Positions 3,329-61,700 of a stretch of DNA of 64,000 nucleotides are shown piece by piece. The stretch is from Macrostomum lignano. Its lineage: Eukaryota. The DNA is taken from positions 62,001 through 126,000 of the forward strand of contig NIVC01002131.1 in NCBI GenBank assembly GCA_002269645.1, read 5' to 3'. Under the pieces are notes generated by a model. It was not told the origin of the DNA, searched no databases, and saw only the letters and a list, made by a program, of their open reading frames with translations. Position numbers and translations under genes: made by a program. How positions within the stretch are numbered: position 1 is the first letter of the stretch; each line of letters starts with the position of its first letter.

Positions 3329-4019
3329 TAGCTCCTCGCAGTTGAACATTTTTAGCACTTTTACTTGCAGAGAAATATACACGACTTAAAACTATTTTTA
3401 TGACTTTCAGAATCTAAATAAACTTTCAAGTGGCGAAGGTACGAATTTATTAGAGCCGTATCTATTTGTTATGTCTTCTTTCATGAATTAAAGAGTTCCT
3501 CAATTTTTGGACTTCAAAACAAATGGCATTCATGCAGGAATAATAAATAGACATTACTTATATTATTATGACATATTATAGCTATTAATGCAGCTTGCAT
3601 ATCCACTGAATTCCTGTTCCACGGTCAATGACTCTCAACAACATTACAAAAGCTTGATTAGCCTCAAACTCTTGATTGTGCCGTTGCTGAGTCAGTTTGT
3701 TCCGGTACTTTGCTGGCTTTGATTCATTGCGTTGTTGGTAGCAACGGTAAACAAAACTAAAGCCTTAATCCATCAGTTTTGCGGATAATCTAATTATCTG
3801 CTCATTCATTTGTCCTAACAGTGAGGTGGCGCTCTTTATGGCCTGCATTGTGTGCTCAGGGCTTGCATGGTAAAAATGGCTTTATTGTATAAAACGCTTG
3901 TCATGCAATGCATTTTTGACTGAGGGACTGCCAGGCTGCAACCACAATTAACTTCAGTGTTTTGTCAGTTTAGCAAGTACCTGCATACCTGGAAACAGAG
4001 GTAGGTGTTGGTTACTTGT

Positions 4020-4656: not shown

Positions 4657-4663
4657 CCAACAG

Positions 4664-13600: not shown

Positions 13601-14035
13601 CAGATGAAACTGGACCGCGAAATCACCGGAGCGGCGCCGGCACCCGACCAGGTTGAAACGTCGTTCGAAGTCGGCTCGGACGCCGCCTGCTCCGTTTTAG
13701 ACGAGGACGCCGGAGCTCCGGGATTGCGGTCCGGCTTTCGTGGCGAACCGGCTTCGCGCGACGAGCTGGCGTTCCTAACGCGGCGCGTCGACCGTCTGGA
13801 AGGCCGGGTCGGCGGCGCGCTCAACAGCATCGATCGAGTGCTGATGACGCTCGAGAGGCTGGAACGGCTCCGACTCGAGCACCGCACGTCGCTATACCGA
13901 ATGCTGAAGCTTGTGAGGGCTCCTTTGTCTGGGTCGCCTGAGGTATCTAGACTCAATCTGATGGAGCAGCTTCAGCAGGAACTTCGTCAATGGGATTCGC
14001 CAGCGGCCGGTGTTGGGAAACCTGAGCAGCAGTGA
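4664..14035 (+). CDS. PKD2: Polycystin-2 (TRPP) channel, 8 coding exons (4664-4970, 5041-5171, 5245-5536, 11418-11639, 12175-12956, 13032-13159, 13404-13521, 13604-14035), ~803 aa
   Basis: Polycystin domain ([17 protein letters not shown]; [24 protein letters not shown]), S1-S6, pore [24 protein letters not shown]-hand [12 protein letters not shown], coiled coil [13 protein letters not shown]. All junctions are GT-AG and phases sum in frame. PKD2 vs PKD2L-type not resolved. Confidence 0.95.
5562..11285. repeat. 5.7-kb 12-bp minisatellite (GTGTCTGTCTTA)n with variant units, in PKD2 intron 3
   Basis: Continuous array; source of the 600-1100 aa VSVL/CLSV ORFs. Confidence 0.98.
11720..11895 (-). 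mobile_element. Decayed tRNA-related SINE-like fragment (B box only)
   Basis: Minus strand reads GACTCTCCCACCTAAGTCCCGGGTTCGATTCTC (B box at 11857-11866); no recognisable A box. Confidence 0.4.
11991..12150 (+). mobile_element. tRNA-derived SINE-like element in PKD2 intron 4
   Basis: A box CAGCTCAGCGG (12001-12011) and B box GGTTCAATTC (12044-12053) at tRNA spacing, without a full cloverleaf. Confidence 0.55.
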
Positions 14036-14139: not shown

Positions 14140-18348
<4,209 letters not shown>

Positions 18349-20918: not shown

Positions 20919-22720
20919 TCACAGACCGGAGTACACCGGCCCGCCATCTCCGCCTTTAATCAGCGGCATCCGCTCATTGCCGGCCGTTGCCGACGCCGCC
21001 GCCGCAGTCATTGAGTCGGAAAAATCGGCGGCACCCGCGCCGCTAGCATCGACAAGACCGGCTCTACGGCGCCGGCGCCGGCGCCAAGCGCGCACGTAGC
21101 CAGCAACGGCGAGGCCGACAATGACGGAGACGATAGCGGAGGCGGACAGCACCGCGTACAGACTGGCGGTCGCCTGGCAGGCGTTGCTGGACTTGTCAGC
21201 GGCCAGGAAAGGACCGCGGCACTGGATTGGCTCGTAGCTGCCTGCCGGACACACGGACAGGGCCGGACAGGACTCGGGGTCCACCCAGGGCCGGGGACAG
21301 TAGTAGCCGGCCGGGCAGGCCAGGCAGCCCAGGGAGCCCTCGGCCCGATTGTAATAGCCGGGCTGGCACAGCTTGCAGTCGTCTACAGCCGGGTAGGCTT
21401 TGTAGAAGCCGCGCCTGCAGGCCTGGCAGTCAAGGCCGCCTTCGTGTTTCTGATCCCGCCCGGCTGGGCAGACCACACAGGCGCTGGCGCCGGTCCAGTT
21501 AGCGAAGGTGCCCGCCGGACAGGGCTGGCAGGCCGACTGACCCGCCGTGTGGCTGAACTGGCCTGGCGGGCAGAGCTGTGGAAGTTTTCCAAGAGCGCTA
21601 ATTAGACGACGAGGCATGAGACTACCTATGTTACAGTTAGTTGCTCCTGCCTTATACCCAATATGAACTATTGCAATCGCTTGTAAGGAAGGTAATCTGA
21701 ATGTAGGACAAGCGTACCCCTGCCCGATATAGCCAGCCCCATTAAAGCACCTATAGTTTTCCCTTCATTCCATGTATCTTATGTATCAGTATCTTCCCAA
21801 CGGTTCCCCTTCTCCCCCACTGTTTGTTCCCCATTCTCCCCTACGGTTCGACACTTCCCTACGGTTCCCATTCTCCCCCTACTGTTCCCCATTCTCCCCT
21901 CTACGGTTCGACATTCTCCCCTACGGTTCCCATTCTCCCCTACGGTTCCCATTCTCCCCCTACGGTTCCCCATTCTCCCCCCTACGGTTCGACATTCTCC
22001 CCTACGGTTCCCATTCTCCCCCTACGGTTCCCCATTCTCCCCCCTACGGTTCCCCATTCTCCCCCTACGGTTCCCCATTCTCCTCCTACGGTTCCCCATT
22101 CTCCCCCTACGGTTCCCCATTCTCCCCCTACGGTTCCCCATTCTCCTCCTACGGTTCCCCATTCTCCTCCTACGGTTCCCCATTCTCCTCCTACGGTTCC
22201 CCATTCTCCTCCTGCGGTTCCCCATTCTCCCCTATACGATTCTTCTTCCACCAGTCCTCAATTTTACTTGGCACTCTAAACTGGCCAACTCGTCCGAGTA
22301 GCTCCCGGCCGGACAGGCGCCGCACAGCTGTGCGCCTGACTCGGATTTGTTGAAACCCGGCCGGCATTCGGTACAGTTAATGGCGCCTCTGCTGGGCGCC
22401 TCCTCGCCTGCTGGACAGGCTGTGCAGCCGGCCTGGCCGGACGCAGGCTGGTGCATGCCCACCGGACAGGGCTGACAGTCCCGCTGTCCAGGCTTGGCCT
22501 GGCTAGTGCCAGGCGGACACCGGGCGCACTGGCCGACATCTGTGCAACGACCCTGGGGACATTTGGTGCAGCCAGGTTCGTTAAGATTCCACACTCGGCC
22601 AGCCGGGCACTCAACGCAAGTCGCGGCGTCGCTGGCAGACATCAAAGAGGCCGTCGATATTAATAATTGCGCAATTAGTGCCGCCGCCAGTCTAACTAAA
22701 TTGATTTGGCGTTTTATCAT
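20919..22720 (-). CDS. Type I membrane protein with ~13 CxxCPxG (GCC2/GCC3, ephrin-receptor-like/TNFR-like) repeats, 2 exons (22720-22268, 21575-20919), ~369 aa
   Basis: Signal-peptide-like N-terminus MIKRQINLVRLAAALIAQLLISTASLMSA; repeated C..CP.G units; TM LYAVLSASAIVSVIVGLAVAGYV followed by poly-Arg; phase-0 GT-AG intron. Confidence 0.85.
21800..22235. repeat. ~21-bp minisatellite (CCCCCTACGGTTCCCCATTCT)n in the intron of the Cys-rich gene
   Basis: Tandem units; PPTVPHS/PYGSPFS ORFs. Confidence 0.93.
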
Positions 22721-24320: not shown

Positions 24321-24812
24321 TAGGGATTGCAATCCCGGGATCCCGAAATCCCGGGATTGGGCCTAAATCCCGGGATTTCCAGTCCCAGGATCCGGGACCC
24401 CAAATCCCGGGACTAATTTTTGTTAATATTTTTTACAAAAAGTGCTGTAATATAAACATAATTAGGCCCACAACTAGTTTATTATACTGCGCTAATTTCC
24501 GTTAATTGCCTCACGTCGTGTGGCACCTTTTTAAACCCCGCATCACAGATTTAAATGTCAAATTAATTCCAATTTAAATTTTAATATGATTTGCTTCTTT
24601 ACTACTAATTAGTACATTTATACTACTTACTTCAATAGGTCACAAGATAATGCTGTTATCATCTACAAATAGATCATTATCTCTATAACAATAAAAAAGT
24701 AAGCAAAAAAGCGTTTAGCGCATATTTTGCCTTAAAATTTCAACCTAGAAGCATAAAAATCTGTATTATTCTGATCCCGGGATCACAAAAATCCGGGATT
24801 TTGCAATCCCTA
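24321..24812. mobile_element. hAT-type MITE, 492 bp
   Basis: 8-bp TSD GCCAGAAC (24313-24320, 24813-24820); TIR TAGGGATTGCAA/TTGCAATCCCTA; subterminal ATCCCGGGA repeats; AT-rich core. Confidence 0.9.
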
Positions 24813-26796: not shown

Positions 26797-30677
<3,881 letters not shown>

Positions 30678-31385: not shown

Positions 31386-31789
31386 GGTCGATTTCAGCTC
31401 AAGTGGCGTCAAGATGAGTCAGGGTAATTGCTGTCGAAAGAAGAGCTGTTGTGCAGTTATCGAACAGAGTGCTCAAAACGAATTCCAGACTCGATACTAA
31501 GCTGCATGCGGCAGCTTTCCGACAGAAGCAAAGCAGAGCAGAGGGACAGGGAAAGGGGATAGAAGAGAGAAGCGCTGGATACATGCCGTCTTCTATTTAG
31601 TAGAAGAAGTAGATACCTATCTGCTTGCACGTAAATGTACGAAGACATAAAATAAACAGATATTGCCGATATGTAGCGTACATCTAGTTATCTAATTTTA
31701 CACTACCCAGAGCAAGGACCATCTTTCGATGCGTAGAGGTAGCTCGTACGAGTGAAAATATATTTCTACATTAGCAGATTCAGTCCATT

Positions 31790-32416
31790 GCCGATATGTA
31801 GCGTAGTTATCTAATTCTTATGTACCAGGATTGGTGGATTGCCGATATGTAGCGTAGCTATCTAATTCGTATGTACCAGGATTGGTGGATTGCCGATATG
31901 TAGCGTAGTTATCTAATTCTTATGTACTAGGATTGGTGGATTGCCGATATGTAGCGTAGCTATCTAATTCGTATGTACCAGGATTGGTGGATTGCCGATA
32001 TGTAGCGTAGTTATCTAATTCTTATGTACCAGGATTGGTGGATTGCCGATATGTAGCGTAGTTATCTAATTCTTATGTACCAGGATTGGTGGATTGCCGA
32101 TATGTAGCGTAGTTATCTAATTCTTATGTACCAGGATTGGTGGATTGCCGATATGTAGCGTAGTTATCTAATTCTTATGTACCAGGATTGGTGGATTGCC
32201 GATATGTAGCGTAGTTATCTAATTCTTATGTACCAGGATTGGTGGATTGCCGATATGTAGCGTAGCTATCTAATTCGTATGTACCAGGATTGGTGGATTG
32301 CCGATATGTAGCGTTGTTATCTAATTATTATGTACCAGGATTGGTGGATTGCCGATATGTAGCGTAGTTATCTAATTCTTATGTACCAGGATTGGTGGAT
32401 TGCCGATATGTAGCGT
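31790..32416. repeat. 51-bp tandem repeat (TTGCCGATATGTAGCGTAGTTATCTAATTCTTATGTACCAGGATTGGTGGA)n
   Basis: About 12 near-identical units between the convergent adaptor and SMG6 3' ends. Confidence 0.95.
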
Positions 32417-32860
32417 AAATATCGGTCTACATTAAAAGCAAAACAAAGGTCAATGGTGCTGCTTCTAGAAGGCGGCCAGTGAAGTAAGGAAGGCAGCAAG
32501 AGCAAAAGGACCAGAGCATTTATTTAATTACTCGTAGGAATTGAAGAGAGTGCAGGAATCGCGAAACGAATGCTTCATAAACATCGCAAGCAGTTTATTT
32601 TATATTATATTTTCAGTATATTATACACAAAATGCACTGCAATGCATTAGGGCAGTATAAATAATATCGCGTTGGAGGGAAATTTGAAAAATTAAGGCAA
32701 AAAGAAAATTAAAACTCGTATACATAGATTAATTTACAATGAGAGAGAGAGAAAGTAATTATATAGGCAGGTGTGACATCAGATATTAGCATACTAAGTA
32801 CACTTTGTACTTTCAAAGATTACGCGACTAGCCTGCGCTCGGCTGAGGGACAGCTGAAGG

Positions 32861-35800
32861 TCAATTCCGGCACATGGGCAGGCCGGACCACTTGAAGAAG
32901 GCCGGCACTGTCTTTGCGGGAATGTTCGACCCGATGGCCTTCAGCCGGAGGTTCCTGTCGCTGGTCAGCAGCACAATGTCCCTGTGCAGCCTGACGGGCT
33001 GGTCTGTGGGCACGAGTAGGTGGGCTAATACTATTTATATAAGCTTGCTGCATTCGTCTGGAGGCCCTTTATCTCCCAGCCTCATCAAAGCCTGTATCTC
33101 CTAGGCTCATCCAAGTCTTCATCTCCCAGCCTCATCCAAACATTTATCTTCCAGCCTCATCCAACTCTTTTATCTCCCAGCCTCATCCAACCCTCCATCT
33201 CCCAGCCTCATTCAAACCTTCATCTCTCAGCCTCATCCAACCCTCCATCTCCCAGCCTCATCCAACCCTCCATCTCCCAGCCTCATTCAAACCTTCATCT
33301 CTCAGCCTCATCCAACCCTCCATCTCCCAGCCTCATCCAACCCTTCATCTCCCAGCCGACTGGAACCCCAGGTCCGTGACACGTGACGGTCAGCCTTCAG
33401 CAGACGGGACGCACTCACCCTTATCCTTAGGCATAAAGGCGCTAGCCTTGTCCTGGCAGTGGTTCATGCAGCAGGACAGAATGAGGTCGTCGTTCTTAGC
33501 CGGCCGGCCGATCACCTCGGACCGGAAAGCGATGGTGTCCAACGTGCTGCCCTTGGCCGTGACCGCTTTGACCCGGCGCCTGGCTGCTCCGCCTGCCTTG
33601 GACTCGAATGCCTCCTCCAGCATGGCAACCGCGGCTCGAGCCTGGCTGGCAACGTAGCCAGCGTGCTCGCTCGAGTCGCCGTGCTTAGCCAGGTGATCCA
33701 ATTCGTTGAGCACTACAATTGGCAGAATCAGATTGTGCTTGCCCATGGCTAGTAGGCTGCGTATCTCGCCCAGGTAGTGAATGTAGCAATTGGTGTCCGG
33801 CAGCAGGTTGATCGGCACAATCTCCAGCTCCATGTAGCGCTGGCCGGACGACTCCAGGGCGGACTGAAGGCGGGGGGAGGCGGGGTTGATTTGAGGGGGT
33901 GACAAGTCACGTGACATCTACTGAGACTGGTCACGTGACGATTACTGAGACTGGTCACGTGACGGCTACTGAGACTGGTCACGTGACGGCTACTGAGACT
34001 GGTCACGTGACGATTACTGAGAGTCACGTGACGGCTACTGAGACTTGTCACGTGACGGCTATTAAGACTAGTCACGTGACGGCTACTGAGACTGGTCACG
34101 TGACGGCTATTAAGACTAGTCACGTGACGGCTACTGAGACTGGTCACGTGACGGCTACTGAGACTGTCACGTGACGGCTACTGAGACTGGCCACGTGACG
34201 ATTACTAACACAAATGATCACGTGACAGTGTCTAGCCAGATGGCAAATCACGTGACAGACAGTCCAATTACCTTATAAGCCCGCTGGCGCTCCTGCTGCT
34301 CGTCCAGGGCCCGTCGCAGTTCCTGCTTGCGCAGACGCAGCTCCCGAATGCCGTCAGCAGCCGCCGACGCGGCCAGCTCGTCGTCGGCCGAAGCGGCACC
34401 GGATTCATCCGGCTCATCCTGGATGCCGGCCTCCGCAAACTCCAGCGACGGCGGTTGCGGCTGCGGCTGTTGGCAATCTTCCATCCGCTCGGAGGCCAGC
34501 TTGTCGAGCTGCTGGCTGAAGTAGGCACCGCCGGCCTCCATGCTGTAGCCGAGCAGGGGCGGCTCCAGGCCGCACAGATAGTCGGCGAACACGGCGCAGG
34601 CGTCCAGCCTGATCGAGTCCTCCAGCAGGCGTTCGCGCACCGACCAGGCTTCGGGCGCGTCCGTCACCGCCGACAGCTCCGCCGGCGCCTGCTTGGCGAC
34701 GTAGAAAATCGGGGTCCGGTTGAGCATGGGGGTGAAGCCGTTGGCGAAGACGTCCTCCTGAAGGATCACGTGCAGCCGGCAGCTGCCCGGCGGCGAGATC
34801 GGCGGCTTCTTGGACTCCTCAAAGTCCAACAGCTGGCGGCGAACCTCCGGCCGGTTGGAGAATCGAGCGCAGTCGGTGAACAGGCTGGCCAGGTCCTCCC
34901 AGACGTCCAGCTGAGGCTGCAGGTGCGGGTCACGCTGCAAGGGTGGCGGGTTCCACGCCTCCGGGGACACCTCCATCCAGTCTAGCAGCAGCTTCAGCGA
35001 GGACAGGAGCGCCCGGGTGGGCTCCGGCAGGGGAAGGCAGCCGCCGTTCTTGACGTGTTCCTGCCGGTTGGGGGGAAGGGCGGCGGTGGGTAACGTATTT
35101 AACAACAGATGCGCGCATAGATGCCTACTCATAGTATCCTGATTGGGCTGCGATGCCAGTCCGATTCGATTCTAATTTGCTGAATTATTGGCTTAATTAG
35201 AATGTCCGCCAGGCATGCCGTGTGACGGGCTGTGTGACAGGGCGTGTGACAGGCTGTGTGATAGATTGCAGTAATCTGTGTGACAGGCTGTGTAATAGAT
35301 TGCAGTAATCTGTGTGACAGGCTGTGTGATAGATTGCAGTAATCCGTGTGACAGGCTGTGTGATAGATTGCAGTAATCTGTGTGACAGGCTGTGTGATAG
35401 ATTGGAGTAATCTGTGTGACAGGCTGTGTGATAGATTGGAGTAATCTGTGTGACAGGCTGTGTGATAGATTGGAGTAATCTGTGTGACAGGCTGTGTGAT
35501 AGATTGGAGTAATCTGTGTGAAGGCTGTGTGATAGATTGCAGTAATCTGTGTGAAGGCTGTGTGATAGATTGCAGTAATCTGTGTGACAGGCTGTGTAAT
35601 AGATTGGAGTAATCTGTGTGACAGGCTGTGTGACAGGCCGTGAACCCGGTGCAAACTCACAGCCAGCAGGTGCCGGCAGTGCCTAGCCAGCACGGCGGCA
35701 AAGTCCAGCGCCAGCCGAACGGCGCTCTCCAACTGCACAGATCTGTACTGGGCCGCTCCTGGCGGTCCCTGGCGGGCGGCCCAGCTGGCGGAGAACACGC

Positions 35801-38608
35801 AGCCGGCCGCCAGTTGAAGTAGCCGCTCAGCCGGCGGCTCGTGGCGCAGCCAGGCTGCCAGCTCAAGCAGAGTCTGCGAGCAGGCCTCCTGGAAGCTCTC
35901 CATGCCGATGCGGGTGAACAGCTTGCCGTGGCAGTGCAGGTAGCTGGCCGTGAATGCCGTGTTGATCTCAATGAAGGACAGCTGGTCCAGGTCCTCCTCT
36001 TGTTCGACGTCCTCTTCGTCAGAGTTGAGCAGGCCGGAGCTGAGCTGGCGGCCGGCGCCGGACACCGGCACCCAGACTTCGACGCGGCAGCGCCGGTTCG
36101 GCTGTTGAAGCGCCCGGAGGCCGCCGCTGCTGAGCGACGGCCCGGAAGAGCCGGCGTTCTTCGCCCGCTGACGCTTGCTGCGCTCCGCTTCTCTCTGCCG
36201 CCAGGCCGCCTCGGCGCGGCGTCTGGCCTCTTCAAATAGCTGGGCCAGGTACTGGCGGGACAGGTCCACCGGGTGGCTGGCGGCCAGCGACCGCATGTAG
36301 TAGTACACCGCGTCTAGCCGGCGCTTCTGCCGGGGCGGCGGCGGGGGGTTCTTCAGGTGGGGCGGTGCTTCAGGTGGGGCGGTGCTTCAGGTGGGGCGGT
36401 TCTTCAGGTGGGGCGGTGCTTCAGGTGGGGCGGTGCTTCAGGTGGGGCGGTGCTTCAGGTGGGGCGGTTCTTCAGGTGGGGCGGTGCTTCAGGTGGGGCG
36501 GTTCTTCAGGTGGGGCGGTTCTTCAGGTAGGGGCGGTTCTTCAGGTGGGGCGGTTCTTCAGGTGGGGCGGTTCTTCAGGTGGGGCGGTTCTTCAGGTGGG
36601 GCGGTGCTTCAGGTGGGGCGGTTCTTCAGGTGGGGCGGTTCTTCAGGTGGGGTGGTGCTTCAGGTGGAGCGGTTCTTCAGGTGGGGCGGTTCTTCGGGTA
36701 GGGGAGGGAGTTCTTTAGGTAGGGCGGTGCTTCAGATGAGGCGGTGCTTCAGTTGGGGCGGTTCTTCAGGTGGGGCGGTTCTTCAGGTGGGGCGGTTCTT
36801 TAGGTGGGGCAGTTCTTCAGGTGGAGCGGTTCTTCAGGTGGGGCGGCTCTTCAGGTAGGGGTGGTTCTTCAGGTGGGCGATTCTTCAGGTAGGGGAGGGA
36901 GTTCTTCAGGTAGGGCGGTGCTTCAGGTGGGGCGATTTTTCAGGTGAGGTGATAGTTCAGGCATGAAAATTCTTAAGATGAAAACTTAATTCCTCTCAGG
37001 GACAGGGCAGTTCCGCTACTCTTTCAAGCGAAGCGATTATTGATTAGCGGATGAAAATTCTTAACATAAAGAAGATTCAAAGTCGGATTGATTGATCTCA
37101 TGGAAAGTCATCTAATTGGAACTCAAAAAGAGTCAATGAATTAAAGAAAACTCACTGTTGCATTAGCCAGCACAGCCAGCTGATGGTAGGTCCGACCATT
37201 CTTGGGCTCCAGCGCCACAGCCTTCAAGTACCAGCTGGGTAAGTTGAAGAGGGTTGAAGAGGGAAGAGAAATAATCATTTCTAGAATCAATTCTTAGTAT
37301 ATGGGATTAGTATATGGGATTACCTTGAATCATTCACCTGAGTGTTGCCAAGGGACACTCACAAAATTGGCTTAGAAACATTTCTAAGATTTTTTAATAC
37401 TTTTTAAAAACATTCCTACGATAATAAATATTTTGTAGAAACATTTCCATACCATATTTCTTAGAAACATTTCCATTCGATATTTCTTAGAAACATTTCC
37501 ATTCGATATTTCTTAGAAACATTTCCATGCCATATTTCTTAGAAACATTTCCATTCGATATTTCTTAGAAACATTTCCAGACGATATTTCTTAGAAACAT
37601 TTCCAGACGATATTTCTTAGAAACATTTCCATACCATATTTCTTAGAAACATTTCCATACGATATTTCTTAGAAACATTTCCATACGATATTTCTTAGAA
37701 ACATTTCCATACGATATTTCTTAGAAACATTTCCAGACGATATTTCTTAGAAACATTCTCATGATAACAATTCATTGCTTAGAAACACTCGTACGATAAT
37801 TCATTCTAAGAATCTTTTACACTAACACTCAAAAAACTGAAAAAGAAATCTTAGAAAAATGAACTCAACGATTTTACTTTCAAACTAAAATACATCTATT
37901 TCGTAGAATAATTCACAGGAGCACCCAGCTCACCTTCTAGCTTCGCTATAGTCGGCGCCACCGGAGAAGACCTCTCTGTAGCGGAGCAAATCACCAATGT
38001 TGAGGTAGAGCCGCTGGATGAGCAGCAGGCCGAGCCGCTGCCAGCGGGTGCACCTCACCGCAGGCGGCAGGAAGCCGATGCGGAGCGGCAGCTCAACCGG
38101 CAGTTCGTGCTCGGCGGCCAACTGGTCAGCAAGTTGTTGCAGAAATTGCCAGCCAGACTCGATCATGTCCAGCGCCAGTTCCCGGCCACGCTCGGCCAGT
38201 CGCTCCGGCTGATCCGGCCCGGACATCTGGCGTAGCTGTTCAACAATTGCGTGAAACCCTGAGCGCCACATTCTCTGGTCTAGGGCCGGCTGCGGGCCTG
38301 AGTTCGATTCCTGCCAGCCGGCACCTGCCCGCAGGGCGTCGGCGCACCTGTGCAGCAGGTCGAGCCGGGGGCGTTGGACCAGGCCCCACCACACCTGCGG
38401 GTCCATGCTGGGAGCCCACTGCTGGACCAGCCTATCCAGCTCGGAGTCCAGCTGGCAAACCTGCTCAATGTGCTCGGCTGCGGCTTGGGACTCCTCTGAC
38501 TGCATGGCCGGCTGCGGCTGCGCGTGATGCGACTGTGGCCGCACTACCACTATGGGGACCTGGGCGTGTGCGGAAGGGGTGGCCGATAGCAATGACAGAC
38601 AGACAGAC

Positions 38609-38653
<45 letters not shown>

Positions 38654-41600
38654 CGAAAAGAACTTTAGTCAGCATAATTAGTATAGGAAAATATGACACA
38701 ACCCGATTTCCTTATGGTGAAATACATAGCAAGTACAGGCCCAGAAAAATGGCAAAGTCTGAAATTCCATGTGCACGCAGACTTAGTTTTACGAAATGAA
38801 TAGTGGCTTAATTAGACACACCACTTCAGACATATAAACCTGATATTTGCGTATAACTTTACGCATTCAAATTAACTTCTTTTAAAGCAGTATTATATTT
38901 CAATTCGATACAAACACGATTTTTACACAAGTTAATAAAATTAGCCAGTTTACAAATATTTTGGCAGCTCTTTTAAAACAAAATTGCGTAATTTAACATC
39001 CAAGCATTGAAATGTCCAAGTATCCAAGTATCGAATCCGATCCGGTCCAATCCGATTAACAAGACAAGGGTGCAAACTAGTCTCCGGTGTGTCCGATCCG
39101 GTCCAATCCGATTAACAAGACAAGGGTGCAAACTAGTCTCCGGTGTGTCCGATCCGGTCCAATCCGATTAACAAGACAAGGGTGCAAACTAGTCTCCGGT
39201 GTGTCCGATCCGGTCCAATCCGATTAACAAGACAAGGGTGCAAACTAGTCTCCGGTGTGTCCGATCCGGTCCAATCCGATTAACAAGACAAGGGTGCAAA
39301 CTAGTCTCCGGTGTGTCCGATCCGGTCCAATCCGATTAACAAGACAAGGGTGCAAACTAGTCTCCGGTGTCCGATCCGGTCCAATCCGATTAACAAGACA
39401 AGGGTGCAAACTAGTCTCCGGTGTGTCCGATCCGGTCCAATCCGATTAACAAGACAAGGGTGCAAACTAGTCTCCGGTGTGTCCGATCCGGTCCAATCCG
39501 ATTAACAAGACAAGGGTGCAAACTAGTATCCGGTGTGTCCGATCCGGTCCAATCCGATTAACAAGACAAGGGTGCAAACTAGTCTCCGGTGTGTCCGATC
39601 CGGTCCAATCCGATTAACAAGACAAGGGTGCAAACTAGTCTCCGGTGTCCGATCCGGTCCAATCCGATTAACAAGACAAGGGTGCAAACTAGTCTCCGGT
39701 GTGTCCGATCCGGTCCAATCCGATTAACAAGACAAGGGTGCAAACTAGTCTCCGGTGTGTCCGATCCGGTCCAATCTGATTAACAAGACAAGGGTGCAAA
39801 CTAGTCTCCGGTGTGTCCGATCCGGTCCAATCCGATTAACAAGACAAGGGTGCAAACTAGTCTCCGGTGTGTCCGATCCGGTCCAATCCGATTAACAAGA
39901 CAAGGGTGCAAACTAGTCTCCGGTGTGTCCGATCCGGTCCAATCCGATTAACAAGACAAGGGTGCAAACTAGTCTCCGGTGTGTCCGATCCGGTCCAATC
40001 CGATTAACAAGACAAGGGTGCAAACTAGTCTCCGGTGTGTCCGATCCGGTCCAATCCGATTAACAAGACAAGGGTGCAAACTAGTCTCCGGTGTGTCCGA
40101 TCCGGTCCAATCCGATTAACAAGACAAGGGTGCAAACTAGTCTCCGGTGTTTCCGATCCGGTCCAATCCGATTAACAAGACAAGGGTGCAAGCAGTTTTA
40201 TTTACTTGATTTTATTTTAGAGTTCTAAACCAGCGACAACTTGTGTTTTCGCGCATGCAGTGCATTCGTTCTCGAAAGCAGAAAGTATTTTTGATGAGCT
40301 TTTGTATGAGCTTTTTTTATAATAAGCGTTCCTGGACAACTCCAACAGATTCGTTGCCTTTTTACATTGGCGTTTGGATGATTAACAATACTATGCAAAA
40401 AATGCTCTCTCTCTCTTGTATAAAGCAACCTATTTACTTATTTTTTATGGTGTGTAATGCTAGTAGGATGATTTTTCTTGTCGATTTCATTCATACATTT
40501 GGTGTACATTCATTTAAATTGTATGTAATTTTAGTACCTTTTTGTGTTCAATTTTTGAGAGTGTAAGTTTTATAGCTATATTGGTATTCTTTCTCAAAAT
40601 GCAAAAAAACTTGTGTTTGTAGACGTAGATGATGTAGTTGCTGACGTTCATGTTCTAGGAAAAACTTTTGCTTTTTTAAATCACTTTCAGCTACAAGAAT
40701 TGGTGACATGGATCAAGTGCAACATCTACCGATTAGTCAGAGACAGAGCAGTCTACGACATTTGATCGAAAACTTTGATCGAGCTTGTGCTTGGTTTGGG
40801 GATGATTCCAATCCGTCAAACTGTCGGATCAACTGGGTATGATTTGTCTTCGGCTACAGAGGGCATCATACCAGCCTACGAATCCCGCTGGTATTCGAAC
40901 GGGCATCTTAAAGTTCGAATACCAGCGGGTACATACGGGAGGATAGCAGGCCGATCTAGCCTAGCTCTACGCGGCATCTTTATCGGTGGAGGTGTTTTTG
41001 ATCCGGACTATACTGGCAAGATATGCATAGTTTTGTTCAATTACAATTCCGAAGATTTTCCTACTATGCCGATCTTCGGATTGCGTAGTTGATCTTGGCG
41101 CAAGTGTATGTGATGGAGGACGCTTTTGAAGTCACACATGGCCACCTTCTTACCATGTGAATATTATTCGTTAACCTTCATTGTGGCACAATGGTATGCA
41201 GACTCAGACTTTATAGCAAGCGATTGTTGTGGTACATGCTCGAGGACGTAGTAACATGCGGTAGTAAAAACCGGATTCGTGTCCGAGCATCTCTGAGAGC
41301 TCCGAACATTTTCGGATCTTGTATTTATAGCAAGCATTGCATGTTGTTTGTGTCAGTAAAACATTTTAATTGTTGCTTGTTGATTAAGGCATAGTTGAAA
41401 ATTTTATAATTCTTCAGGTCAGGTTAATTAAGTCTCATTTAACGCTTATGGTTGATATTTTACACAGCTAAATCACTGTTGAGGCAATGAAAAATCAGTT
41501 ATTACTAGATCGATGAGAGTTGGAGATATGTTCCCTATGGTGGAACATTTTCCGCACATCCAACAAACGCACTTTCTGTAATTCGATGTTATAACTGATT

Positions 41601-42989
41601 AACTTTCGTGCTCAACATCCTCAACTACATTGTGCTTAGGATTTGTGAGGGCATTGTGGGGTTGTAGCCTAGTGGTTAGAGAATCGGACTCACGACCGAA
41701 AGGTCGGGGGTTCGAATCCTGATCCCACTAGGTACTTAAGAATGGACAAATTATATTTTCTTTAAAGAAGGTGATAATGATCAAAATGTTTTTAAGCAAA
41801 TTTAACTTGAATAGATGTACTATTTTCCTATAGTACAAGCATTAACTCACCTGGCGCCCATCTTTGGGCCCTCGGTGCATGGCGTCGCGCCGCAGAGTCT
41901 CGGGCAAACGAATGAGACCGCCAGTGTGCGGCTGCTGCTGCTGCTGTTGAAGCTGACCACCGGCACCGGATTCCGCATCCGGCTGTTGATGAAGATGCTG
42001 CGGGCCCATCGGGTCCTGGCCTGGATTCAACACAGACTGCGGCGGCTGCTGCTGCTGCTGAGGCATGCGAGGCGACGGCAGGGCAACCACGGGATCCTTG
42101 GCCGGGTCGTACAGACGAGCGTCCGGTCGGAGCACCTCACCCCGGTCGAACTCGGCCTCGGAGAAGCTGTCCGAGAAGCCGCCGCGACCGCCGCCGCCGC
42201 GCGAGGACTCGGAGCAGCGCTTCTCCCGCCTGCCTGAACCGCCGCCGGCGCCTCCGCCCCTGGGCCGGTAATTGTAACTGGGCTGCGGCTGCGGCAGCGG
42301 AGGCGGAGGCGGAGGCGGCGGCTGATGAGGCAGTGGCGGATGCTGGTCAGCCTCCTGCGGTTCCCACATCTCGTCGTCGGCAAAAAATTCGACAACCGCA
42401 TCGGCATCGCCAACTGTTTGAAACTGCTTCTTCTGATGCGGCTGTTGCTGTTGCTGCTTTTGCAGCTTATTTCCGCTGCGCCGGTTTCTTCTCCGACCTC
42501 CGCCCCCGCTTCCGCCCCTGCCTCCGCCCCGCCTTCGCCAGCAGTATTGCCAGCCTGAAGCTGCGGATCTTGCGGCGATGGCTGCTTTTTTACTGCCTGT
42601 TGCTGCTGCTGCTGCTTCGGTTGTTGCTGCGCTTGAGGATTGGGCTGTTTCTGCTGCTTTTTCTGTTGCGGCGGTTGTTGCTGTTGCTGCTGCTGCTGCT
42701 GAGACTGGCCAGCGCTGTGCCCGCCCTTGCGACGGCTTTTGTTATAAAAAGTGCGCCCGCCACCAGCTGACAGCGCGGCAGCCTTGCCGACAGCGTCCGC
42801 GTCTGCCGCACTTGCGGCGGCGCCTTCCGTCCTGCCACTGCCTCCTCCGCCGCCTCCTCTGCCTCCACCGCCGCCGCCGCCGCCGCCGCCGCCGCTGCCG
42901 CTACCAACACGGTCGCTGCGACTGATTGGCGGCGGTCGATAGATCTGCTGATCTGGATGTCGCTGCTGCCTGCTGCCAGTGCCTTCCAT
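32861..42989 (-). CDS. SMG6: SMG6/EST1A NMD endonuclease, 7 exons (42989-41851, 38559-37934, 37234-37156, 36326-35661, 35060-34272, 33863-33419, 33003-32861), ~1295 aa; one apparent 1-nt deletion near 42468
   Basis: EBM-like RHPDQQIYRP; EST1/14-3-3-like IGDLLRYRE, WYLKAVALEPKNGRTYHQLAVLA, RRLDAVYYYMRSLAAS; PIN domain LLPDTN, VVLNELD, NDDLILSCC, VLLTSDRNLRLKA. Phases close after adding 1 nt to exon 1. Confidence 0.95.
33070..33355. repeat. ~25-bp minisatellite (CCATCTCCCAGCCTCATCCAACCCT)n in SMG6 intron 6
   Basis: Tandem degenerate units. Confidence 0.9.
33904..34258. repeat. 24-bp minisatellite (GTCACGTGACGGCTACTGAGACTG)n in SMG6 intron 5
   Basis: About 15 units, each with a palindromic CACGTG core. 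Confidence 0.93.
35220..35640. repeat. 34-bp minisatellite (GTGTGACAGGCTGTGTGATAGATTGCAGTAATCT)n in SMG6 intron 4
   Basis: About 11-12 units. Confidence 0.93.
36352..36955. repeat. 17-bp G-rich minisatellite (CAGGTGGGGCGGTTCTT)n in SMG6 intron 3
   Basis: Tandem units decaying toward 36955. Confidence 0.93.
37430..37760. repeat. 26-bp AT-rich minisatellite (TTTCTTAGAAACATTTCCATACGATA)n in SMG6 intron 2
   Basis: About 12 units. Confidence 0.93.
39040..40190. repeat. 56-bp highly homogeneous tandem array (GATCCGGTCCAATCCGATTAACAAGACAAGGGTGCAAACTAGTCTCCGGTGTGTCC)n in SMG6 intron 1
   Basis: About 20 units, almost all identical; two 54-bp variants. Confidence 0.97.
40801..41140 (+). pseudogene. 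dUTPase pseudogene in an AT-rich island, antisense within SMG6 intron 1
   Basis: Motifs TGYDL (I), GRIAGRSSLA (II), GGVFDPDYTG (III). After a frameshift, RIA*LIL (IV, Gln codon to TAG). Motif V not seen. Confidence 0.85.
41656..41729 (+). pseudogene. tRNA pseudogene or tRNA-derived SINE head (Val-CAC-like)
   Basis: 7-bp acceptor stem GTGGGGT/ATCCCAC, A box TAGCCTAGTGG, B box GGTTCGAATCC, CTCACGA loop; anticodon, D and T stems imperfect. Confidence 0.65.
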
Positions 42990-43061
42990 TGACACTCTTG
43001 GTGGCTGACTGGAAGGGCGGATCAGCTTAATTAATGCAAACAGACTGCGCGTTTATCAAAA

Positions 43062-43490
43062 CCACTGATTCCATGGTCTATCCCACTGATTCCACAGTCT
43101 ATCCCACTGATTCCACAGTCTATCCCACTGATTCCATGGTCTATCCCACTGATTCCACAGTCTATCCCACTGATTCCACAGTCTATCCCACTGATTCCAT
43201 GGTCTATCCCACTGATTCCACAGTCTATCCCACTGATTCCACAGTCTATCCCACTGATTCCACAGTCTATCCCACTGATTCCATGGTCTATCCCACTGAT
43301 TGCATGGTCTATCCCACTGATTCCACAGTCTATCCCACTGATTCCATGGTCTATCCCACTGATTGCATGGTCTATCCCACTGATTCCACAGTCTATCCCA
43401 CTGATTCCACAGTCTATCCCACTGATTCCACAGTCTATCCCACTGATTCCACAGTCTATCCCACTGATTCCACAGTCTATCCCACTGATT
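43062..43490. repeat. 21-bp minisatellite (CCCACTGATTCCACAGTCTAT)n just upstream of the SMG6 start
   Basis: About 20 units; YPTDSTV ORF. Confidence 0.95.
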
Positions 43491-44129: not shown

Positions 44130-44182
44130 CAGTCTGACACAGACAGACAGACACACACACAGACAGACACACAGACAGACAC

Positions 44183-44225
<43 letters not shown>

Positions 44226-44226
44226 C

Positions 44227-44257
<31 letters not shown>

Positions 44258-44258
44258 C

Positions 44259-44305
<47 letters not shown>

Positions 44306-44502
44306 CACAGACAGACAGACACACACACAGACAGACAGACAGACAGACACACAGACAGACAGACACACAGACAGACACACAGACAGACAGACACACAGAC
44401 AGACAGACAGACAGACAGACACACAGACAGACACACAGACAGACAGACAGACACACAGACAGACAGACAGACAGACGGACAGACAGACAGACACACACAC
44501 AC

Positions 44503-44533
<31 letters not shown>

Positions 44534-44650
44534 CATAGACAGACAGACACATAGACAGACAGACACACAGACAGACAGACACACAGACAGACAGACACAC
44601 ACACAGACAGACAGACAGACAGACAGACACACAGACAGACAGACAGACAC

Positions 44651-44701
<51 letters not shown>

Positions 44702-44770
44702 CACAGACAGACAGACAGACACACAGACAGACAGACAGACAGACGGACAGACAGACAGACACACACACAC

Positions 44771-44801
<31 letters not shown>

Positions 44802-44918
44802 CATAGACAGACAGACACATAGACAGACAGACACACAGACAGACAGACACACAGACAGACAGACACACACACAGACAGACAGACAGACAGACAGACACAC
44901 AGACAGACAGACAGACAC

Positions 44919-44965
<47 letters not shown>

Positions 44966-45000
44966 CACAGACAGACAGACAGACACACAGACAGACAGAA
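44130..45000. repeat. Compound (CAGA)/(CA) microsatellite downstream of NF1
   Basis: Mixed ACAG and AC units over ~870 bp. Confidence 0.97.
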
Positions 45001-58700: not shown

Positions 58701-61700
58701 CGGGCCGAGGCGGGTAGATAGCGGAGAGGTGGGTAGATAGCGGACAGAGGCGGGTAGATAGCAGAAAAGGTGGGTAGATAGCTGCTTTTGATAGCTTTTA
58801 TCACCTGCAATAACTAATTATTTCATAATTAAATTGCTGACACAACAAAACTGGTCCAGAAGAGAAAACCTAATTGAATTAATTGAGCTAAAGAACTTAA
58901 TAGCCTAATTGTATGCGAAATTTACTGCTTAAATCTGATAGATCAATTTTAAGTCATTGTAGGCAGTGTCTATAGTGCGCTATATTATAATAAAAAGATT
59001 TGTTTAAACAGTAAACGCGGAAAGCGCCATTAACGTAGATGAAATTATTTTGTAAAAAATATTAAACAACTAAAACTTTGCAAACCGTAAACTAATTATA
59101 AAAGAAGACGCACCTGAGACAGCTGATAGGCCTGTTGCTTCTGGGCGACAGTCGGTCTGCCAGATGTGCCAGCAGCATCAGCTGGAGCTCCGCCGGCTGC
59201 TGCAGCTGCGGCGGCGTCGCAGCACTTCTGACGCACAACAACTGGACCAGCGGCAGAGTTAGAGAATGGTGAAGCTTGCGACGGCTGCTGTTGAAGCAGA
59301 GGCGGAGAAGAACTGTTGCCAAGGCCAGGCGAAACGGCTTGCAAATGCTGCTGCTGCTGCTGTTGCAGTTCGCTCACACTCTCCGTTGAATTGCTTTCAA
59401 CAACCATTGCTCCCATCATCTGGCAGGCTGGATTGTGCAGCGGCGGGATGGGATGCAAATTGGCAATGCATGACTCGAAGATTTAGTATATGTTGACTAG
59501 CCACTTTCGCACCCCCTTCGAGTGGTCTAAATAACCCGATCAAAACGATTGACCAATCTGATCTATTTTTGCTTTTAGCCCTTGAACAGTATTTTTAGTG
59601 GAAAAGAATCGCCAGTGGGGGGTAAAGTTAAGCAAAACGGGCGCGGTTAGTACGCAACTGAATAGGGCTCATATTATCAGTTATTACAGTACTGTAGTAC
59701 GTCTACTAGTACGAATTCAAGATATTAGTACATACAATACAATGTATAGCGCTTACGCTTGACATGAAATCGAAGATGGCAGCGGCTGCGGACTTCCTCG
59801 GAGACGGCGACCAGGGCGGTTAGGTAAGCCACGCTGTTTGGCGTCACCTCGTATTTGTCTCTATTATTGGGCGATTCAGAATTAGAATAGAAAAGTATTA
59901 AGATAATAACAATTTACTTATCGCACTACTTAATCCAGATGAGCAGTAGTGCAATACGCGCATTATTCTGTTATTAACTAACCGCTTCTCCGGCTTGGCC
60001 ACGATAGACAGTAGCATGGATAGAACTCGAATTGTGCGCGACAGAGTTTTAGGACTGGGATGGCGGAAACCCTTCAACAGGTGGCCAACTAGGGCGAAGT
60101 GAAAATTCTCGCGGAATGACAGGCCGACACAGTTGTCCAGCTGTTTGTAAGAGATGTGCAGGATTAGCGGCTGCCGGTATTCCATCATTATGCTCTCCAA
60201 TGAGCGATCGGTGAACATGCCTGGAAAATTTGTATTGGCAGACAGGGGAGCGGAGCTTTGTAACATGCTGTTTTATGGAGATCTAAGAATGCAGCTAGTG
60301 AGGTATGACCCTAGTTGCTATGACACCAGTTGTTATGACTAAAGTTGCTATGACACCAGTTGTTATGGCTAAAGTTGCTATGACACCAGTTGTTATGGCT
60401 AAAGTTGCTATGACACCAGTTGTTATGGCTAAAGTTGCTATGACACCAGTTGTTATGACTAAAGTTGCTATGACACCAGCTGTTATGACTAAAGTTGCTA
60501 TGATACCAGTTGTTATGACTAAAGTTGCTATGACACCAGTTGTTATGACTAAAGTTGCTATGACACCAGTTGTTATGACTAAAGTTGCTATGACACCAGC
60601 TGTTATGACCAAAGTTGCTATGATACCAGCTGTCATGACCAAATTTGCTATAACACCAGCTGCTATGACCTCACTTGCGATTCTATGACCATGATCACTA
60701 ACAGCAATGAGTACTGGGCCCAGTTTTGATAATTGAAATAACTAAAAAACACGCAGGTAAGCAAATTCTCACCCTGATTATCGAGATTGTCCAAGCTCTG
60801 CTCTAGCAGGGCCAGTCCGGCAGCGTACAGGCTGACCTCGTCCAACTGCAGCACGCACAGGGCAATCCAGAAGATGTGCTTATGTATTGGCGAGTTCGGG
60901 TTCAACAGCGGCAGCAGGCGAGTCACCGACATTATAGTAGCTTCGATTAGCGTCAGGTCGGAGTTCCACTGCGACTCGACGCCCCTGTGCATGCGGACGT
61001 CCTTGTCGATGACTTCGAGGTCGCGCGCGTAGCTCTCTAGCGATTTGACCATGATTCGCAGCAGATGCTTGATCTCGTTCTCCGATACGGACTTGGAGAT
61101 GCAGCCGAGTACAATGATTGCGCGGTACTGCAGCGCCGGATTGTGCTGGAAAGCGAATCTCTTGGCTAGCTGGGTCCACTGCTCCAGCCAGTTGCAGTTC
61201 GGGATGTCCTTCATCACGGCTGCGAGAGGACGGGGCGATGATTAGCCAGTATGCTGAGCAGTGTGGGATTTGCGACACTGAGCAGTGTGGGATTCGGACA
61301 GTGAGCAGTGTGGGATTTGGGACACTGAGCAGTGTGGGATTTGCGACACTGAGCAGTGTGGGATTTGCGACACTGAGCAGTGTGGGATTCGGGACAGTGA
61401 GCAGTGTGGGATTTGGGACACTGAGCAGTGTGGGATTTGCGACACTGAGCAGTGTGGGATTTGCGACACTGAGCAGTGTGGGATTTGGAACAGTGATTAG
61501 TGTGGGATTTGGGACACTGAGCAGTGTGGGATTTGGGACACTGAGCAGTGTGGGATTTGGGACAGTAAGCAGTGTGGGATTCGGGACAGTGAGCAGTGTG
61601 GGATTTGGGACACTGAGCAGTGTGGGATTTGGGACACTGAGCAGTGTGGGATTTGGGACAGTGATTAGTGTGGGATTTGGGACACTGAGCAGTGTGGGAT

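What the first reader, a model, noticed from the sequence alone, without database searches (positions are those of the whole stretch)
40195..41650. Intronless AT-rich dUTPase relic inside SMG6 intron 1: candidate endogenous viral or TE cargo
Seen: dUTPase motifs I-IV, no introns, AT-rich codons unlike the GC-rich host exons, a TAG in motif IV and a frameshift. It lies in a ~1.4-kb AT-rich island flanked by a tandem array and a tRNA-like sequence. Known: dUTPases are common cargo of large DNA viruses and some retroviruses/retroelements. Inference: footprint of an uncharacterised flatworm DNA virus or large transposon.
Basis: partly seen in the sequence, partly recalled or inferred. Interest (0 to 1): 0.7.

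Follow-up and report, generated by a model that had tools for sequence, protein, structure and literature searches.

The report
Decayed virus-like dUTPase fragment in intron
A broken dUTPase gene in an intron of an SMG6-like gene is real, and together with the tail end of a viral-type DNA polymerase gene just upstream it is a dead, roughly 0.9-kb leftover of a polinton/adintovirus-like DNA element, which is an ordinary kind of genomic fossil.

Summary
Window 40766-41089 (+) matches Pfam dUTPase (E 2.7e-19). The gene is intronless and broken by one frameshift and one in-frame stop, and its C-terminal motif is lost. It lies in a 38% GC stretch between a 56-bp tandem array and a sub-threshold tRNA-like sequence, on the strand opposite an SMG6-like gene (EST1, EST1_DNA_bind and PIN domains).

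[quoted passage not shown] In the only relatives found the gene order is pPolB, dUTPase, parvovirus-type PLA2, P-loop ATPase. These relatives are two near-identical Macrostomum lignano loci and a divergent contig seen in two sequencing runs. So the island is a truncated fragment of a polinton/Maverick/adintovirus-like element. It is not a processed pseudogene of a cellular dUTPase and not retroelement cargo.

Caveats:
- The dUTPase tree alone is unresolved.
- The host species was not identified.
- No integrase or capsid gene was found, so a bidnavirus-like origin stays open.
- The "AT-rich island" is ordinary intron composition.

It is a new member of a known kind, of modest interest.

The parts
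40213..40389 (+). [quoted passage not shown] The rest of the gene is missing (5' truncation at the edge of the tandem array).
   Evidence: tblastn with the L002 ORF 9061-9651 gave 42% identity over 62 aa, E 2e-8. The L003 homologue gave 41%, E 4e-10. A profile of both gave E 1.5e-10. In L003 this segment is the C-terminus of the same ORF that carries PF03175 DNA_pol_B_2.
40390..40765 (+). Spacer between the polymerase tail and the dUTPase domain. It has no recognisable coding content and 33% GC.
   Evidence: No Pfam or profile hit. The distance from the end of the polymerase match to the dUTPase domain is 410 nt here, against about 470 nt in L002 and about 660 nt in L003.
40766..41145 (+). Broken dUTPase gene (trimeric dUTPase family). 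It has one frameshift, one in-frame stop, a lost or unrecognisable C-terminal motif-V region, and no recognisable start or N-terminal extension.
   Evidence: Pfam PF00692 E 2.7e-19. PDB sequence hits down to 1.3e-18. 48% identity to the M. lignano element dUTPase P0015 and 51% to P0018. The collinear second piece lies in another frame.
41146..41657 (.). Unassigned AT-rich sequence (37% GC). It may be further decayed element DNA or plain intron.
   Evidence: No similarity to the PLA2-like or ATPase-like genes that follow the dUTPase in the relatives, and no Pfam hit.
39036..40191 (.). Neighbour: a 56-bp tandem array with 20.7 copies. It abuts the truncated polymerase relic within about 20 bp.
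   Evidence: Tandem Repeats Finder, 98% matches, score 2263.
41658..41727 (+). Neighbour: a degenerate tRNA-like sequence, single copy in the window. Its membership of the relic is unknown.
   Evidence: Rfam tRNA 21.3 bits, below the 29-bit threshold. Not called by ARAGORN. No other copy found.
33393..38652 (-). Host SMG6-like gene body (PIN_4, EST1_DNA_bind and EST1 exons) downstream of the intron that holds the relic.
   Evidence: Pfam: PIN_4 7.4e-14, EST1_DNA_bind 1.2e-11, and EST1 0.0031 (weak). GC3 is 69-84%.
41842..42995 (-). GC-rich, low-complexity open frames on the host strand. This is the likely upstream exon block bounding the intron; the exon number is not verified.
   Evidence: ORF list. 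69% GC. No informative Pfam hit.

Best explanation
Window 40213-41145 (+) is a dead, truncated fragment of an integrated, protein-primed-polymerase DNA element of the polinton/Maverick/adintovirus kind. What survives is the last ~60 codons of the polymerase gene, a spacer, and the accessory dUTPase gene that follows the polymerase in this lineage.

Inferred history: a linear dsDNA virus-like element, or a piece of one, entered an intron of the SMG6-like gene in the antisense orientation. Deletions and the adjacent tandem array then removed everything but about 0.9 kb. The remainder drifted to intron-like base composition and picked up frame breaks.

In the living element the dUTPase would have hydrolysed dUTP to dUMP and pyrophosphate. 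That keeps uracil out of DNA copied by the element's own polymerase. This follows from established knowledge of the dUTPase family and was not tested here.

Shown: the dUTPase identity, the breaks, the homology to the polymerase tail, and the conserved gene order. Inferred: the mode of integration, the family assignment beyond 'pPolB-bearing element', and the present lack of function.
For: - dUTPase identity: Pfam E 2.7e-19.
- Among 1.84 billion representative proteins, the best single-domain match is P0015 of Macrostomum lignano, and P0018 is second or third.
- Both of these are intronless genes directly downstream of a PF03175 protein-primed PolB.
- The polymerase C-terminal segment of those elements hits the window directly upstream of the dUTPase relic, on the same strand, in the same order and at similar spacing: tblastn E 2e-8 and 4e-10, profile E 1.5e-10.
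- The relatives share the gene order pPolB, dUTPase, parvovirus-type PLA2 (PF08398, 30.7 bits against a cut-off of 23.9), P-loop ATPase with N-terminal Walker A. They are 47-64% identical to each other.
- Parvovirus-like PLA2 genes are a described feature of polintons and Alpha adintoviruses (PMC8502044).
- Retroviral dUTPases match the relic far worse than cellular or large-virus ones, 1e-8 to 1e-9 against 1e-18.
Against: - The dUTPase domain by itself does not group with P0015 or P0018. It falls in the small sister group in 1 and 10 of 200 NJ bootstraps, shares no rare residues with them, and the score margins are small.
- The window contains no integrase, capsid, protease, ATPase or PLA2 relic and no terminal repeats at the island's edges.
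- In the relatives no capsid or protease gene was identified. The ATPase match to Pox_A32 is below Pfam's cut-off (E 2.7e-4). The only rve match (E 5.9e-4, partial) lies outside the inverted repeat.
- The host species was not identified, so it is unknown whether the M. lignano loci belong to the window's own genome.
Confidence: 0.78

Rival explanations
1. The fragment comes from a bidnavirus-like ('bidna-class parvovirus') endogenous element. Such viruses combine an adintovirus-type pPolB with parvovirus genes, and some segments carry kinase-like and dUTPase-like genes.
For: - The relatives carry a parvovirus-type PLA2 domain (PF08398) and a deoxynucleoside-kinase-like gene next to the pPolB and dUTPase.
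- Buck et al. describe bidnavirus segments with thymidine-kinase-like and dUTPase-like genes and an Alpha-class adintovirus PolB (10.1101/2024.03.25.586562).
- L002 has long inverted repeats.
Against: - No parvovirus NS1 helicase or VP jelly-roll capsid was found in L001-L003 by Pfam.
- The P-loop protein is short (232-268 aa) with Walker A at its N-terminus and a weak A32-type match. That fits a packaging ATPase better than an NS1.
- PLA2 genes are also described in polintons and adintoviruses.
Confidence: 0.12
2. It is a processed pseudogene or decayed duplicate of the host's own cellular dUTPase.
For: - The relic is intronless and broken.
- The top protein hit is annotated as a Macrostomum lignano hypothetical protein.
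- The dUTPase tree is unresolved, so cellular ancestry cannot be excluded from that domain alone.
Against: - The top hit is itself an intronless gene inside a pPolB gene row, not a typical cellular locus.
- The relic is preceded by a polymerase-gene tail in the same arrangement.
- No poly(A) tract or flanking direct repeats are present.
- P0015's best 120 relatives include no metazoan dUTPase.
Confidence: 0.03
3. It is dUTPase cargo of an LTR retrotransposon or endogenous retrovirus, such as the giant Gypsy-like elements of planarians, which carry a dUTPase between protease and reverse transcriptase.
For: - dUTPase domains between PR and RT are described in planarian, fungal and rotifer LTR elements (PMC6431247).
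- The window holds a reverse-transcriptase ORF at 14283-16724.
Against: - No protease, RT or integrase similarity lies next to the relic on either strand.
- The RT ORF is 24 kb away, on the other strand, and carries RVT_1 plus RNase H without LTR context.
- Retroviral dUTPases match 9-10 orders of magnitude worse than cellular or large-virus ones.
- The upstream neighbour is a pPolB tail.
Confidence: 0.03
4. It is a fragment of a large nucleocytoplasmic DNA virus (giant-virus-like insertion).
For: The relic and P0015 match chlorella-virus dUTPases well (relic E 2.3e-17; P0015 56-61% identity).
Against: - The linked polymerase matches the protein-primed PolB family PF03175. That giant viruses use a different family-B polymerase family is my own knowledge and was not tested here.
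- The gene rows in the relatives are small.
- dUTPase affinities are not resolved by the tree.
Confidence: 0.03

Closest known systems
Polintons/Mavericks and adintoviruses (midsize eukaryotic linear dsDNA viruses of animals), especially the Alpha class with a PLA2X gene
   Same: - A protein-primed family-B polymerase gene (PF03175) in the relatives, and its 3' end in the window.
- A dense row of intronless genes on one strand.
- A parvovirus-type PLA2 gene.
- A short P-loop ATPase with a weak A32-type match.
- Integration in an animal genome and decay to fragments.
   Different: - No rve integrase, double-jelly-roll capsid, penton or adenain-like protease was found in the window, nor in the roughly 10 kb available from the relatives.
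- The dUTPase and deoxynucleoside-kinase-like genes next to the polymerase are not part of the described core set.
- No related sequence was found in IMG/VR or JGI metagenomes.
Bidnaviridae / bidna-class parvoviruses
   Same: - pPolB of adintovirus type.
- Parvovirus-type PLA2 domain.
- Kinase-like and dUTPase-like accessory genes reported on some segments.
- Inverted terminal repeats.
   Different: No NS1 superfamily-3 helicase or parvovirus VP capsid was detected. The P-loop protein looks like a packaging ATPase instead.
Cellular and large-DNA-virus trimeric dUTPases (Pfam PF00692)
   Same: The domain matches with 45-53% identity to many cellular, chlorella-virus and metagenomic dUTPases. 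Motifs I-III are in frame.
   Different: The gene is broken (one frameshift, one stop, C-terminal motif lost). It has no close relative (none above 54% identity among 1.84 billion representatives) and lies next to a polymerase gene tail.
dUTPase domains of retroviruses and giant Gypsy-like LTR retrotransposons of planarians
   Same: dUTPase carried by a mobile element in a flatworm genome (PMC6431247).
   Different: There the domain is part of a pol polyprotein between protease and reverse transcriptase. Here it is a separate gene after a DNA polymerase, and retroviral dUTPases match poorly.

Membership tests
Trimeric dUTPase (Pfam PF00692) | Match to the family profile above the curated cut-off | tested here: met
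   69.6 bits against a cut-off of 22, E 2.7e-19, profile positions 5-88 of 129.
Trimeric dUTPase (Pfam PF00692) | All five conserved motifs in one open reading frame (needed for an active enzyme) | tested here: not met
   The first three motifs are in one frame. The fourth lies in another frame with an in-frame stop. The fifth was found in no frame.
Polinton/Maverick/adintovirus | [quoted passage not shown] | tested here: met
   The window keeps only the last ~60 codons (profile E 1.5e-10). The homologous full genes in L002 and L003 match PF03175 (2.3e-19 and 1.8e-25).
Polinton/Maverick/adintovirus | Retrovirus-like (rve) integrase | tested here: inconclusive
   None in the window near the relic. 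In L002 there is only a partial, sub-threshold rve match (E 5.9e-4) about 1.3-2.1 kb beyond the outermost inverted match.
Polinton/Maverick/adintovirus | Double-jelly-roll major capsid protein, penton protein, adenain-like protease | tested here: inconclusive
   No Pfam or PHROGs match in any ORF of L001-L003 or L007. The available contigs end or are rearranged just after the ATPase gene, and structure prediction of those ORFs was not possible with the tools allowed.
Polinton/Maverick/adintovirus | FtsK/HerA (A32-like) packaging ATPase | tested here: inconclusive
   The L003 protein of 232 aa matches Pox_A32 at E 2.7e-4, 21.0 bits against a cut-off of 22.8. Walker A is at the N-terminus and a Walker B-like stretch lies about 100 aa in. 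The single-sequence AlphaFold model was too poor to use (pLDDT 45). There is no relic of it in the window.
Polinton/Maverick/adintovirus | Terminal inverted repeats bounding the element | tested here: not met
   The window island has no convincing terminal inverted repeat (best 18 nt at 78%). L002 has a 1.7-kb inverted repeat at 99.9%, but its right arm cuts into the ATPase-like gene. It therefore looks like a rearrangement rather than native termini.
Alpha adintovirus accessory set | Parvovirus-type PLA2 gene (PLA2X) | tested here: met
   The L002 ORF 10661-11101 matches PF08398 at E 3.9e-7, 30.7 bits against a cut-off of 23.9. It has a homologue in L003. It is absent from the window. The C-terminal pX-like part named in PMC8502044 was not testable.
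Bidnaviridae | Parvovirus NS1 superfamily-3 helicase and VP capsid together with pPolB | tested here: not met
   No NS1 or VP match in the ORFs of L001-L003. Only the PLA2-like domain is shared. The contigs are incomplete, so absence is not proven.
Processed pseudogene of a cellular gene | Derivation from a spliced host mRNA, with a poly(A) remnant, flanking direct repeats and no foreign neighbours | tested here: not met
   No poly(A) tract or flanking direct repeats. The upstream neighbour is a polymerase gene tail in the element's gene order.
Retroviral / LTR-retrotransposon dUTPase | dUTPase embedded in a pol polyprotein next to protease and reverse transcriptase | tested here: not met
   No PR, RT or IN similarity adjoins the relic. 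EIAV, FIV and MPMV dUTPases match at 1e-8 to 1e-9, against 1e-18 for cellular-type ones.
tRNA gene (flanking tRNA-like sequence) | Score at or above Rfam's gathering threshold, or a call by a tRNA finder | tested here: not met
   21.3 bits against 29, with mispaired stems. No ARAGORN call.

The most novel reading that the evidence does not exclude
The relic and its relatives (two Macrostomum lignano loci and a divergent contig seen in two sequencing runs) represent an undescribed lineage of animal pPolB viruses or elements. This lineage carries its own nucleotide-metabolism genes (deoxynucleoside-kinase-like and dUTPase) beside a parvovirus-type PLA2 and a packaging-type ATPase. Its gene content would sit between adintoviruses and bidnaviruses. 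It has three members that differ by about 50% in the dUTPase, which implies an old and diverse group that has invaded these genomes repeatedly.
Probability: 0.3. Interest if true: 0.5.

Novelty: new member of a known kind. Interest (0 to 1): 0.35.

Why it matters
Fragments of polinton/adintovirus-like elements are common fossils in animal genomes, so the relic changes little by itself. It has no sign of function and sits harmlessly in an intron.

Its value is as a pointer. It led to a small, so far unnamed group of pPolB gene rows with the order pPolB, dUTPase, PLA2, ATPase, plus a kinase-like gene. No counterpart was found in IMG/VR, JGI metagenomes or solved structures. If fuller copies exist, they would add a flatworm-associated branch to the midsize linear dsDNA viruses of animals. 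They would also bear on how adintovirus-type polymerases and parvovirus-type PLA2 genes came to be combined.

It is also a practical caution. A short dUTPase domain cannot be placed by phylogeny alone. The neighbouring gene fragment settled the question.

Tried and rejected
- The word-indexed protein search with the relic found nothing. The exhaustive HMMER search was needed.
- The last homologue search, spent on an SMG6 exon to identify the host, returned nothing. The ORF contains a 34-bp tandem array that probably swamped the word index. Exact look-ups of two window ORFs also failed. The host species therefore stays unidentified.
- dUTPase distances, rare shared residues and an NJ bootstrap tree did not tie the relic to any group.
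- Pattern scans of IMG/VR and JGI metagenomes, with the relatives' polymerase (alone and as a two-sequence alignment) and with its C-terminal segment, found no relatives.
- PDB sequence searches with the polymerase, its tail and the ATPase found nothing meaningful.
- PHROGs recognised only polymerase and endonuclease VII parts.
- A single-sequence AlphaFold model of the ATPase-like protein was too poor to search with.
- The contexts of other high-scoring dUTPases (P0021, P0023, P0024) were unrelated.
- No second copy of the island and no other element gene was found in the window.
- The island's minus-strand ORFs and remaining plus-strand ORFs have no Pfam match.
- I considered and rejected AT-richness as evidence of foreign origin.


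Full report
Yes. Translation of window 40766-41089 (+) gives a 108-residue open frame. It matches Pfam dUTPase (PF00692) at E 2.7e-19, 69.6 bits against a cut-off of 22, over profile positions 5-88 of 129. It also matches 36 solved dUTPases by sequence, the best at 1.3e-18. The match is collinear with intronless homologues. The remaining part of the domain continues in a different frame and carries one in-frame stop. Nothing resembling the C-terminal motif V is left in any frame. The count for this gene is one frameshift, one stop, loss of the C-terminal end, and no recognisable start or N-terminal extension. No second copy exists in the window.

**2. Surroundings.**
- The minus strand carries an SMG6-like gene: PIN_4 at 33393-33917 (7.4e-14), EST1_DNA_bind at 34251-36308 (1.2e-11) and a weak EST1 match at 37933-38652.
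- The relic lies on the opposite strand in the non-coding gap 38653-41841. A GC-rich low-complexity block of open frames at 41842-42995 bounds that gap upstream. Calling it 'intron 1' is plausible but was not verified.
- To the left is a 56-bp tandem array, 39036-40191, with 20.7 copies.
- To the right is a degenerate tRNA-like sequence, 41658-41727. It scores 21.3 bits against Rfam's 29 and ARAGORN does not call it.
- The island has 38% GC. Other intronic gaps of this gene have 30-41%, and the host exons have GC3 of 69-84%. The 'AT-rich island' is therefore ordinary intron composition between a tandem array and an exon. It is not a compositional signature of foreign DNA.

**3. Relatives of the dUTPase.**
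The word-indexed search found nothing. The exhaustive search of 1.84 billion representative proteins gave 6627 hits, but none above 54% identity. Among single-domain proteins the best is P0015 (48% over 87 residues, 90.9 bits) and the next is P0018 (51% over 86 residues, 87.4 bits). The margins over the following hits (87.0, 87.0, 86.7 bits) are small. P0015 is PAA48955.1, a 'hypothetical protein' of Macrostomum lignano. Its own best named relatives are chlorella-virus, plant and protist dUTPases, with no metazoan among the best 120.

**4. The decisive evidence is gene order.**
- P0015 and its twin P0151 lie on two M. lignano contigs (L001 and L002, 99.9% identical including flanks, so probably one locus assembled twice or duplicated).
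- In L002 the intronless dUTPase ORF (9863-10531) sits in a dense same-strand row:
  - a deoxynucleoside-kinase-like ORF (4253-4933, Pfam dNK 9.4e-19);
  - two unannotated ORFs;
  - an 837-residue protein with DNA_pol_B_2 (PF03175, 2.3e-19) and an endonuclease VII domain;
  - a 196-residue ORF (9061-9651);
  - the dUTPase;
  - a parvovirus-type PLA2 ORF (PF08398, 3.9e-7, above cut-off);
  - a P-loop ORF.
- P0018 lies on a 5-kb contig from run SRR22198361 (L003). That contig has the same order: polymerase, dUTPase, PLA2-like, P-loop protein. It is 47-64% identical to L002. L007, from a second run, is the same element at 99.9%.
- In L003 the counterpart of the 196-residue ORF is the C-terminal part of the polymerase reading frame itself.
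- That C-terminal segment hits the window at 40213-40389. The hit is on the same strand as the dUTPase relic and directly upstream of it. tblastn gave E 2e-8 (L002) and 4e-10 (L003), and a two-sequence profile gave E 1.5e-10.
- The spacing to the dUTPase domain is 410 nt in the window, against about 470 and 660 nt in the relatives.
- A processed copy of a cellular dUTPase mRNA, or a retroelement pol gene, would not have this neighbour.
- No other gene of the row is detectable in the window: not the rest of the polymerase, nor PLA2, ATPase or kinase. The recognisable fragment is about 0.93 kb (40213-41145). The region 41146-41657 is unassigned.

**5. What the dUTPase alone cannot show.**
Over 87 aligned columns the relic is no closer to P0015 or P0018 than to dozens of other sequences. 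It shares no rare residues with them beyond chance. In an NJ tree of 55 sequences it falls with them in 1 and 10 of 200 bootstraps. Its most frequent partner (31%) is a plant protein. The L002 and L003 dUTPases are themselves only 47% identical, while their polymerases are 64% identical. So the gene evolves quickly in this lineage, and the relic is about as far from each as they are from one another. The link to the elements rests on the polymerase tail and the gene order, not on dUTPase phylogeny.

**6. What kind of element?**
- *Pointing to polintons/Mavericks and adintoviruses:* a protein-primed PolB; a parvovirus-type PLA2, described as PLA2X in polintons and Alpha adintoviruses (PMC8502044); and a short P-loop protein with N-terminal Walker A and a near-threshold Pox_A32 match (2.7e-4).
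- *Defining features not met or not found:* no capsid, penton or protease gene was recognised. The only rve match is partial, sub-threshold and outside the inverted repeat. The 1.7-kb inverted repeat of L002 cuts off the 3' end of the ATPase-like gene, so that copy is itself rearranged.
- *State of the relatives:* they are fragments or broken copies too. In L002 the polymerase frame is split once and the ATPase-like gene is truncated once. In L003 the PLA2-like gene is split over two frames once.
- *Bidnavirus alternative:* bidnavirus-like viruses combine an adintovirus-type PolB with parvovirus genes and can carry kinase-like and dUTPase-like genes (10.1101/2024.03.25.586562). They remain a live alternative, although no NS1 or VP was seen.
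- *Other searches:* pattern scans of IMG/VR and JGI metagenomes and sequence searches of the PDB found no further relatives.

**7. Most likely history and mechanism.**
An element of this lineage, or part of one, became inserted in the SMG6-like intron, antisense to the host gene. Deletion, together with the insertion or expansion of the adjoining 56-bp array, removed all but the polymerase tail and the dUTPase. The remainder drifted towards intron composition: GC3 is 42% against 50-59% in the relatives. It also accumulated the breaks counted above.

In the living element the dUTPase would have lowered dUTP so that the element's own polymerase did not build uracil into its DNA. That follows from established knowledge of dUTPases and was not tested here. 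The relic shows no sign of present function.

**8. Novelty.**
This is a new member of a known kind, a decayed fragment of a pPolB virus-like element. No paper in the searchable library links Macrostomum or flatworms with polintons or adintoviruses. The gene row pPolB, dUTPase, PLA2, ATPase with a kinase-like gene seems undescribed. The evidence for a distinct lineage is thin: two loci and one short contig.

**9. Limits.**
- The host species was not identified by any tool.
- 'Flatworm' rests only on where the relatives were found.
- The organism behind runs SRR22198361 and SRR23617216 is unknown to me.
- No repaired, joined or consensus sequence was made or used.

Noticed in passing
window 40884-40900 and 40913-40929: A perfect 17-bp inverted repeat with a 12-nt loop lies inside the dUTPase relic. 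Roughly 5e-6 such repeats would be expected by chance in the island (my own estimate, not a tool result). The right arm encodes a stretch conserved in homologues. The left arm encodes a stretch with no similarity to them. This looks like a template-switch (inverted copy) mutation after the gene died.
   Followed up: partly
L002 1553-3292 and 11689-13427 (plus 1-267 / 13433-13701); also L001: The Macrostomum lignano pPolB gene row is bracketed by a 1.7-kb inverted duplication at 99.9% identity that extends to the edge of the fetched locus. Its right arm replaces the 3' end of the ATPase-like gene, so this copy is rearranged rather than complete. L001 and L002 are 99.9% identical including flanks.
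   Followed up: partly
L003 (Logan SRR22198361, 5023 bp) and L007 (SRR23617216, 1700 bp): A divergent member of the same gene row (polymerase 64%, dUTPase 47% identical to L002) occurs in two unlabelled sequencing runs. A further unannotated gene starts after the ATPase-like gene. The organism is unknown.
   Followed up: partly
window 14283-16724 (-), with ORFs 16622-17293 and 17527-18330 upstream: An open 813-residue ORF carries reverse transcriptase (RVT_1, 1.1e-30) and RNase H (7.1e-13). It looks like a young non-LTR-type retrotransposon copy, unrelated to the relic.
   Followed up: no
window 5558-11287: A 5.7-kb array of a 12-bp unit (478 copies, 92% matches) produces very long spurious ORFs in several frames and a strong AT skew. 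The window as a whole is unusually dense in tandem arrays (for example 27078-28408, 4018-4663, 31787-32417, 43062-43490, 44139-44999).
   Followed up: no
window 35244-35633: A 34-bp tandem array (11.5 copies) lies inside the long open frame that also holds the EST1_DNA_bind match. Part of that 'exon' ORF is probably repeat or intron. This likely explains why the homologue search with it returned nothing.
   Followed up: no
window 24329-24415 (-): ARAGORN calls a tRNA-Ser (GGA) of 87 nt, but the Rfam scan at gathering thresholds reports no tRNA anywhere in the window.
   Followed up: no
window 12180-12983 (+); 20922-21617 and 22235-22720 (-); 60883-62844 (-): Other host coding pieces are present: a polycystin cation-channel exon (PKD_channel, 2.2e-62), ephrin-receptor-like cysteine-rich repeats, and a cornifin-like proline-rich repeat ORF.
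   Followed up: no
L004 (Logan ERR13763433, 18.7 kb): Another high-scoring dUTPase (P0024) sits in a dense gene row with dNK, thymidine kinase, a hydrolase and a BRO1-domain protein. This may be a large DNA virus or a compact eukaryote. It shows no polymerase-tail synteny with the relic.
   Followed up: no
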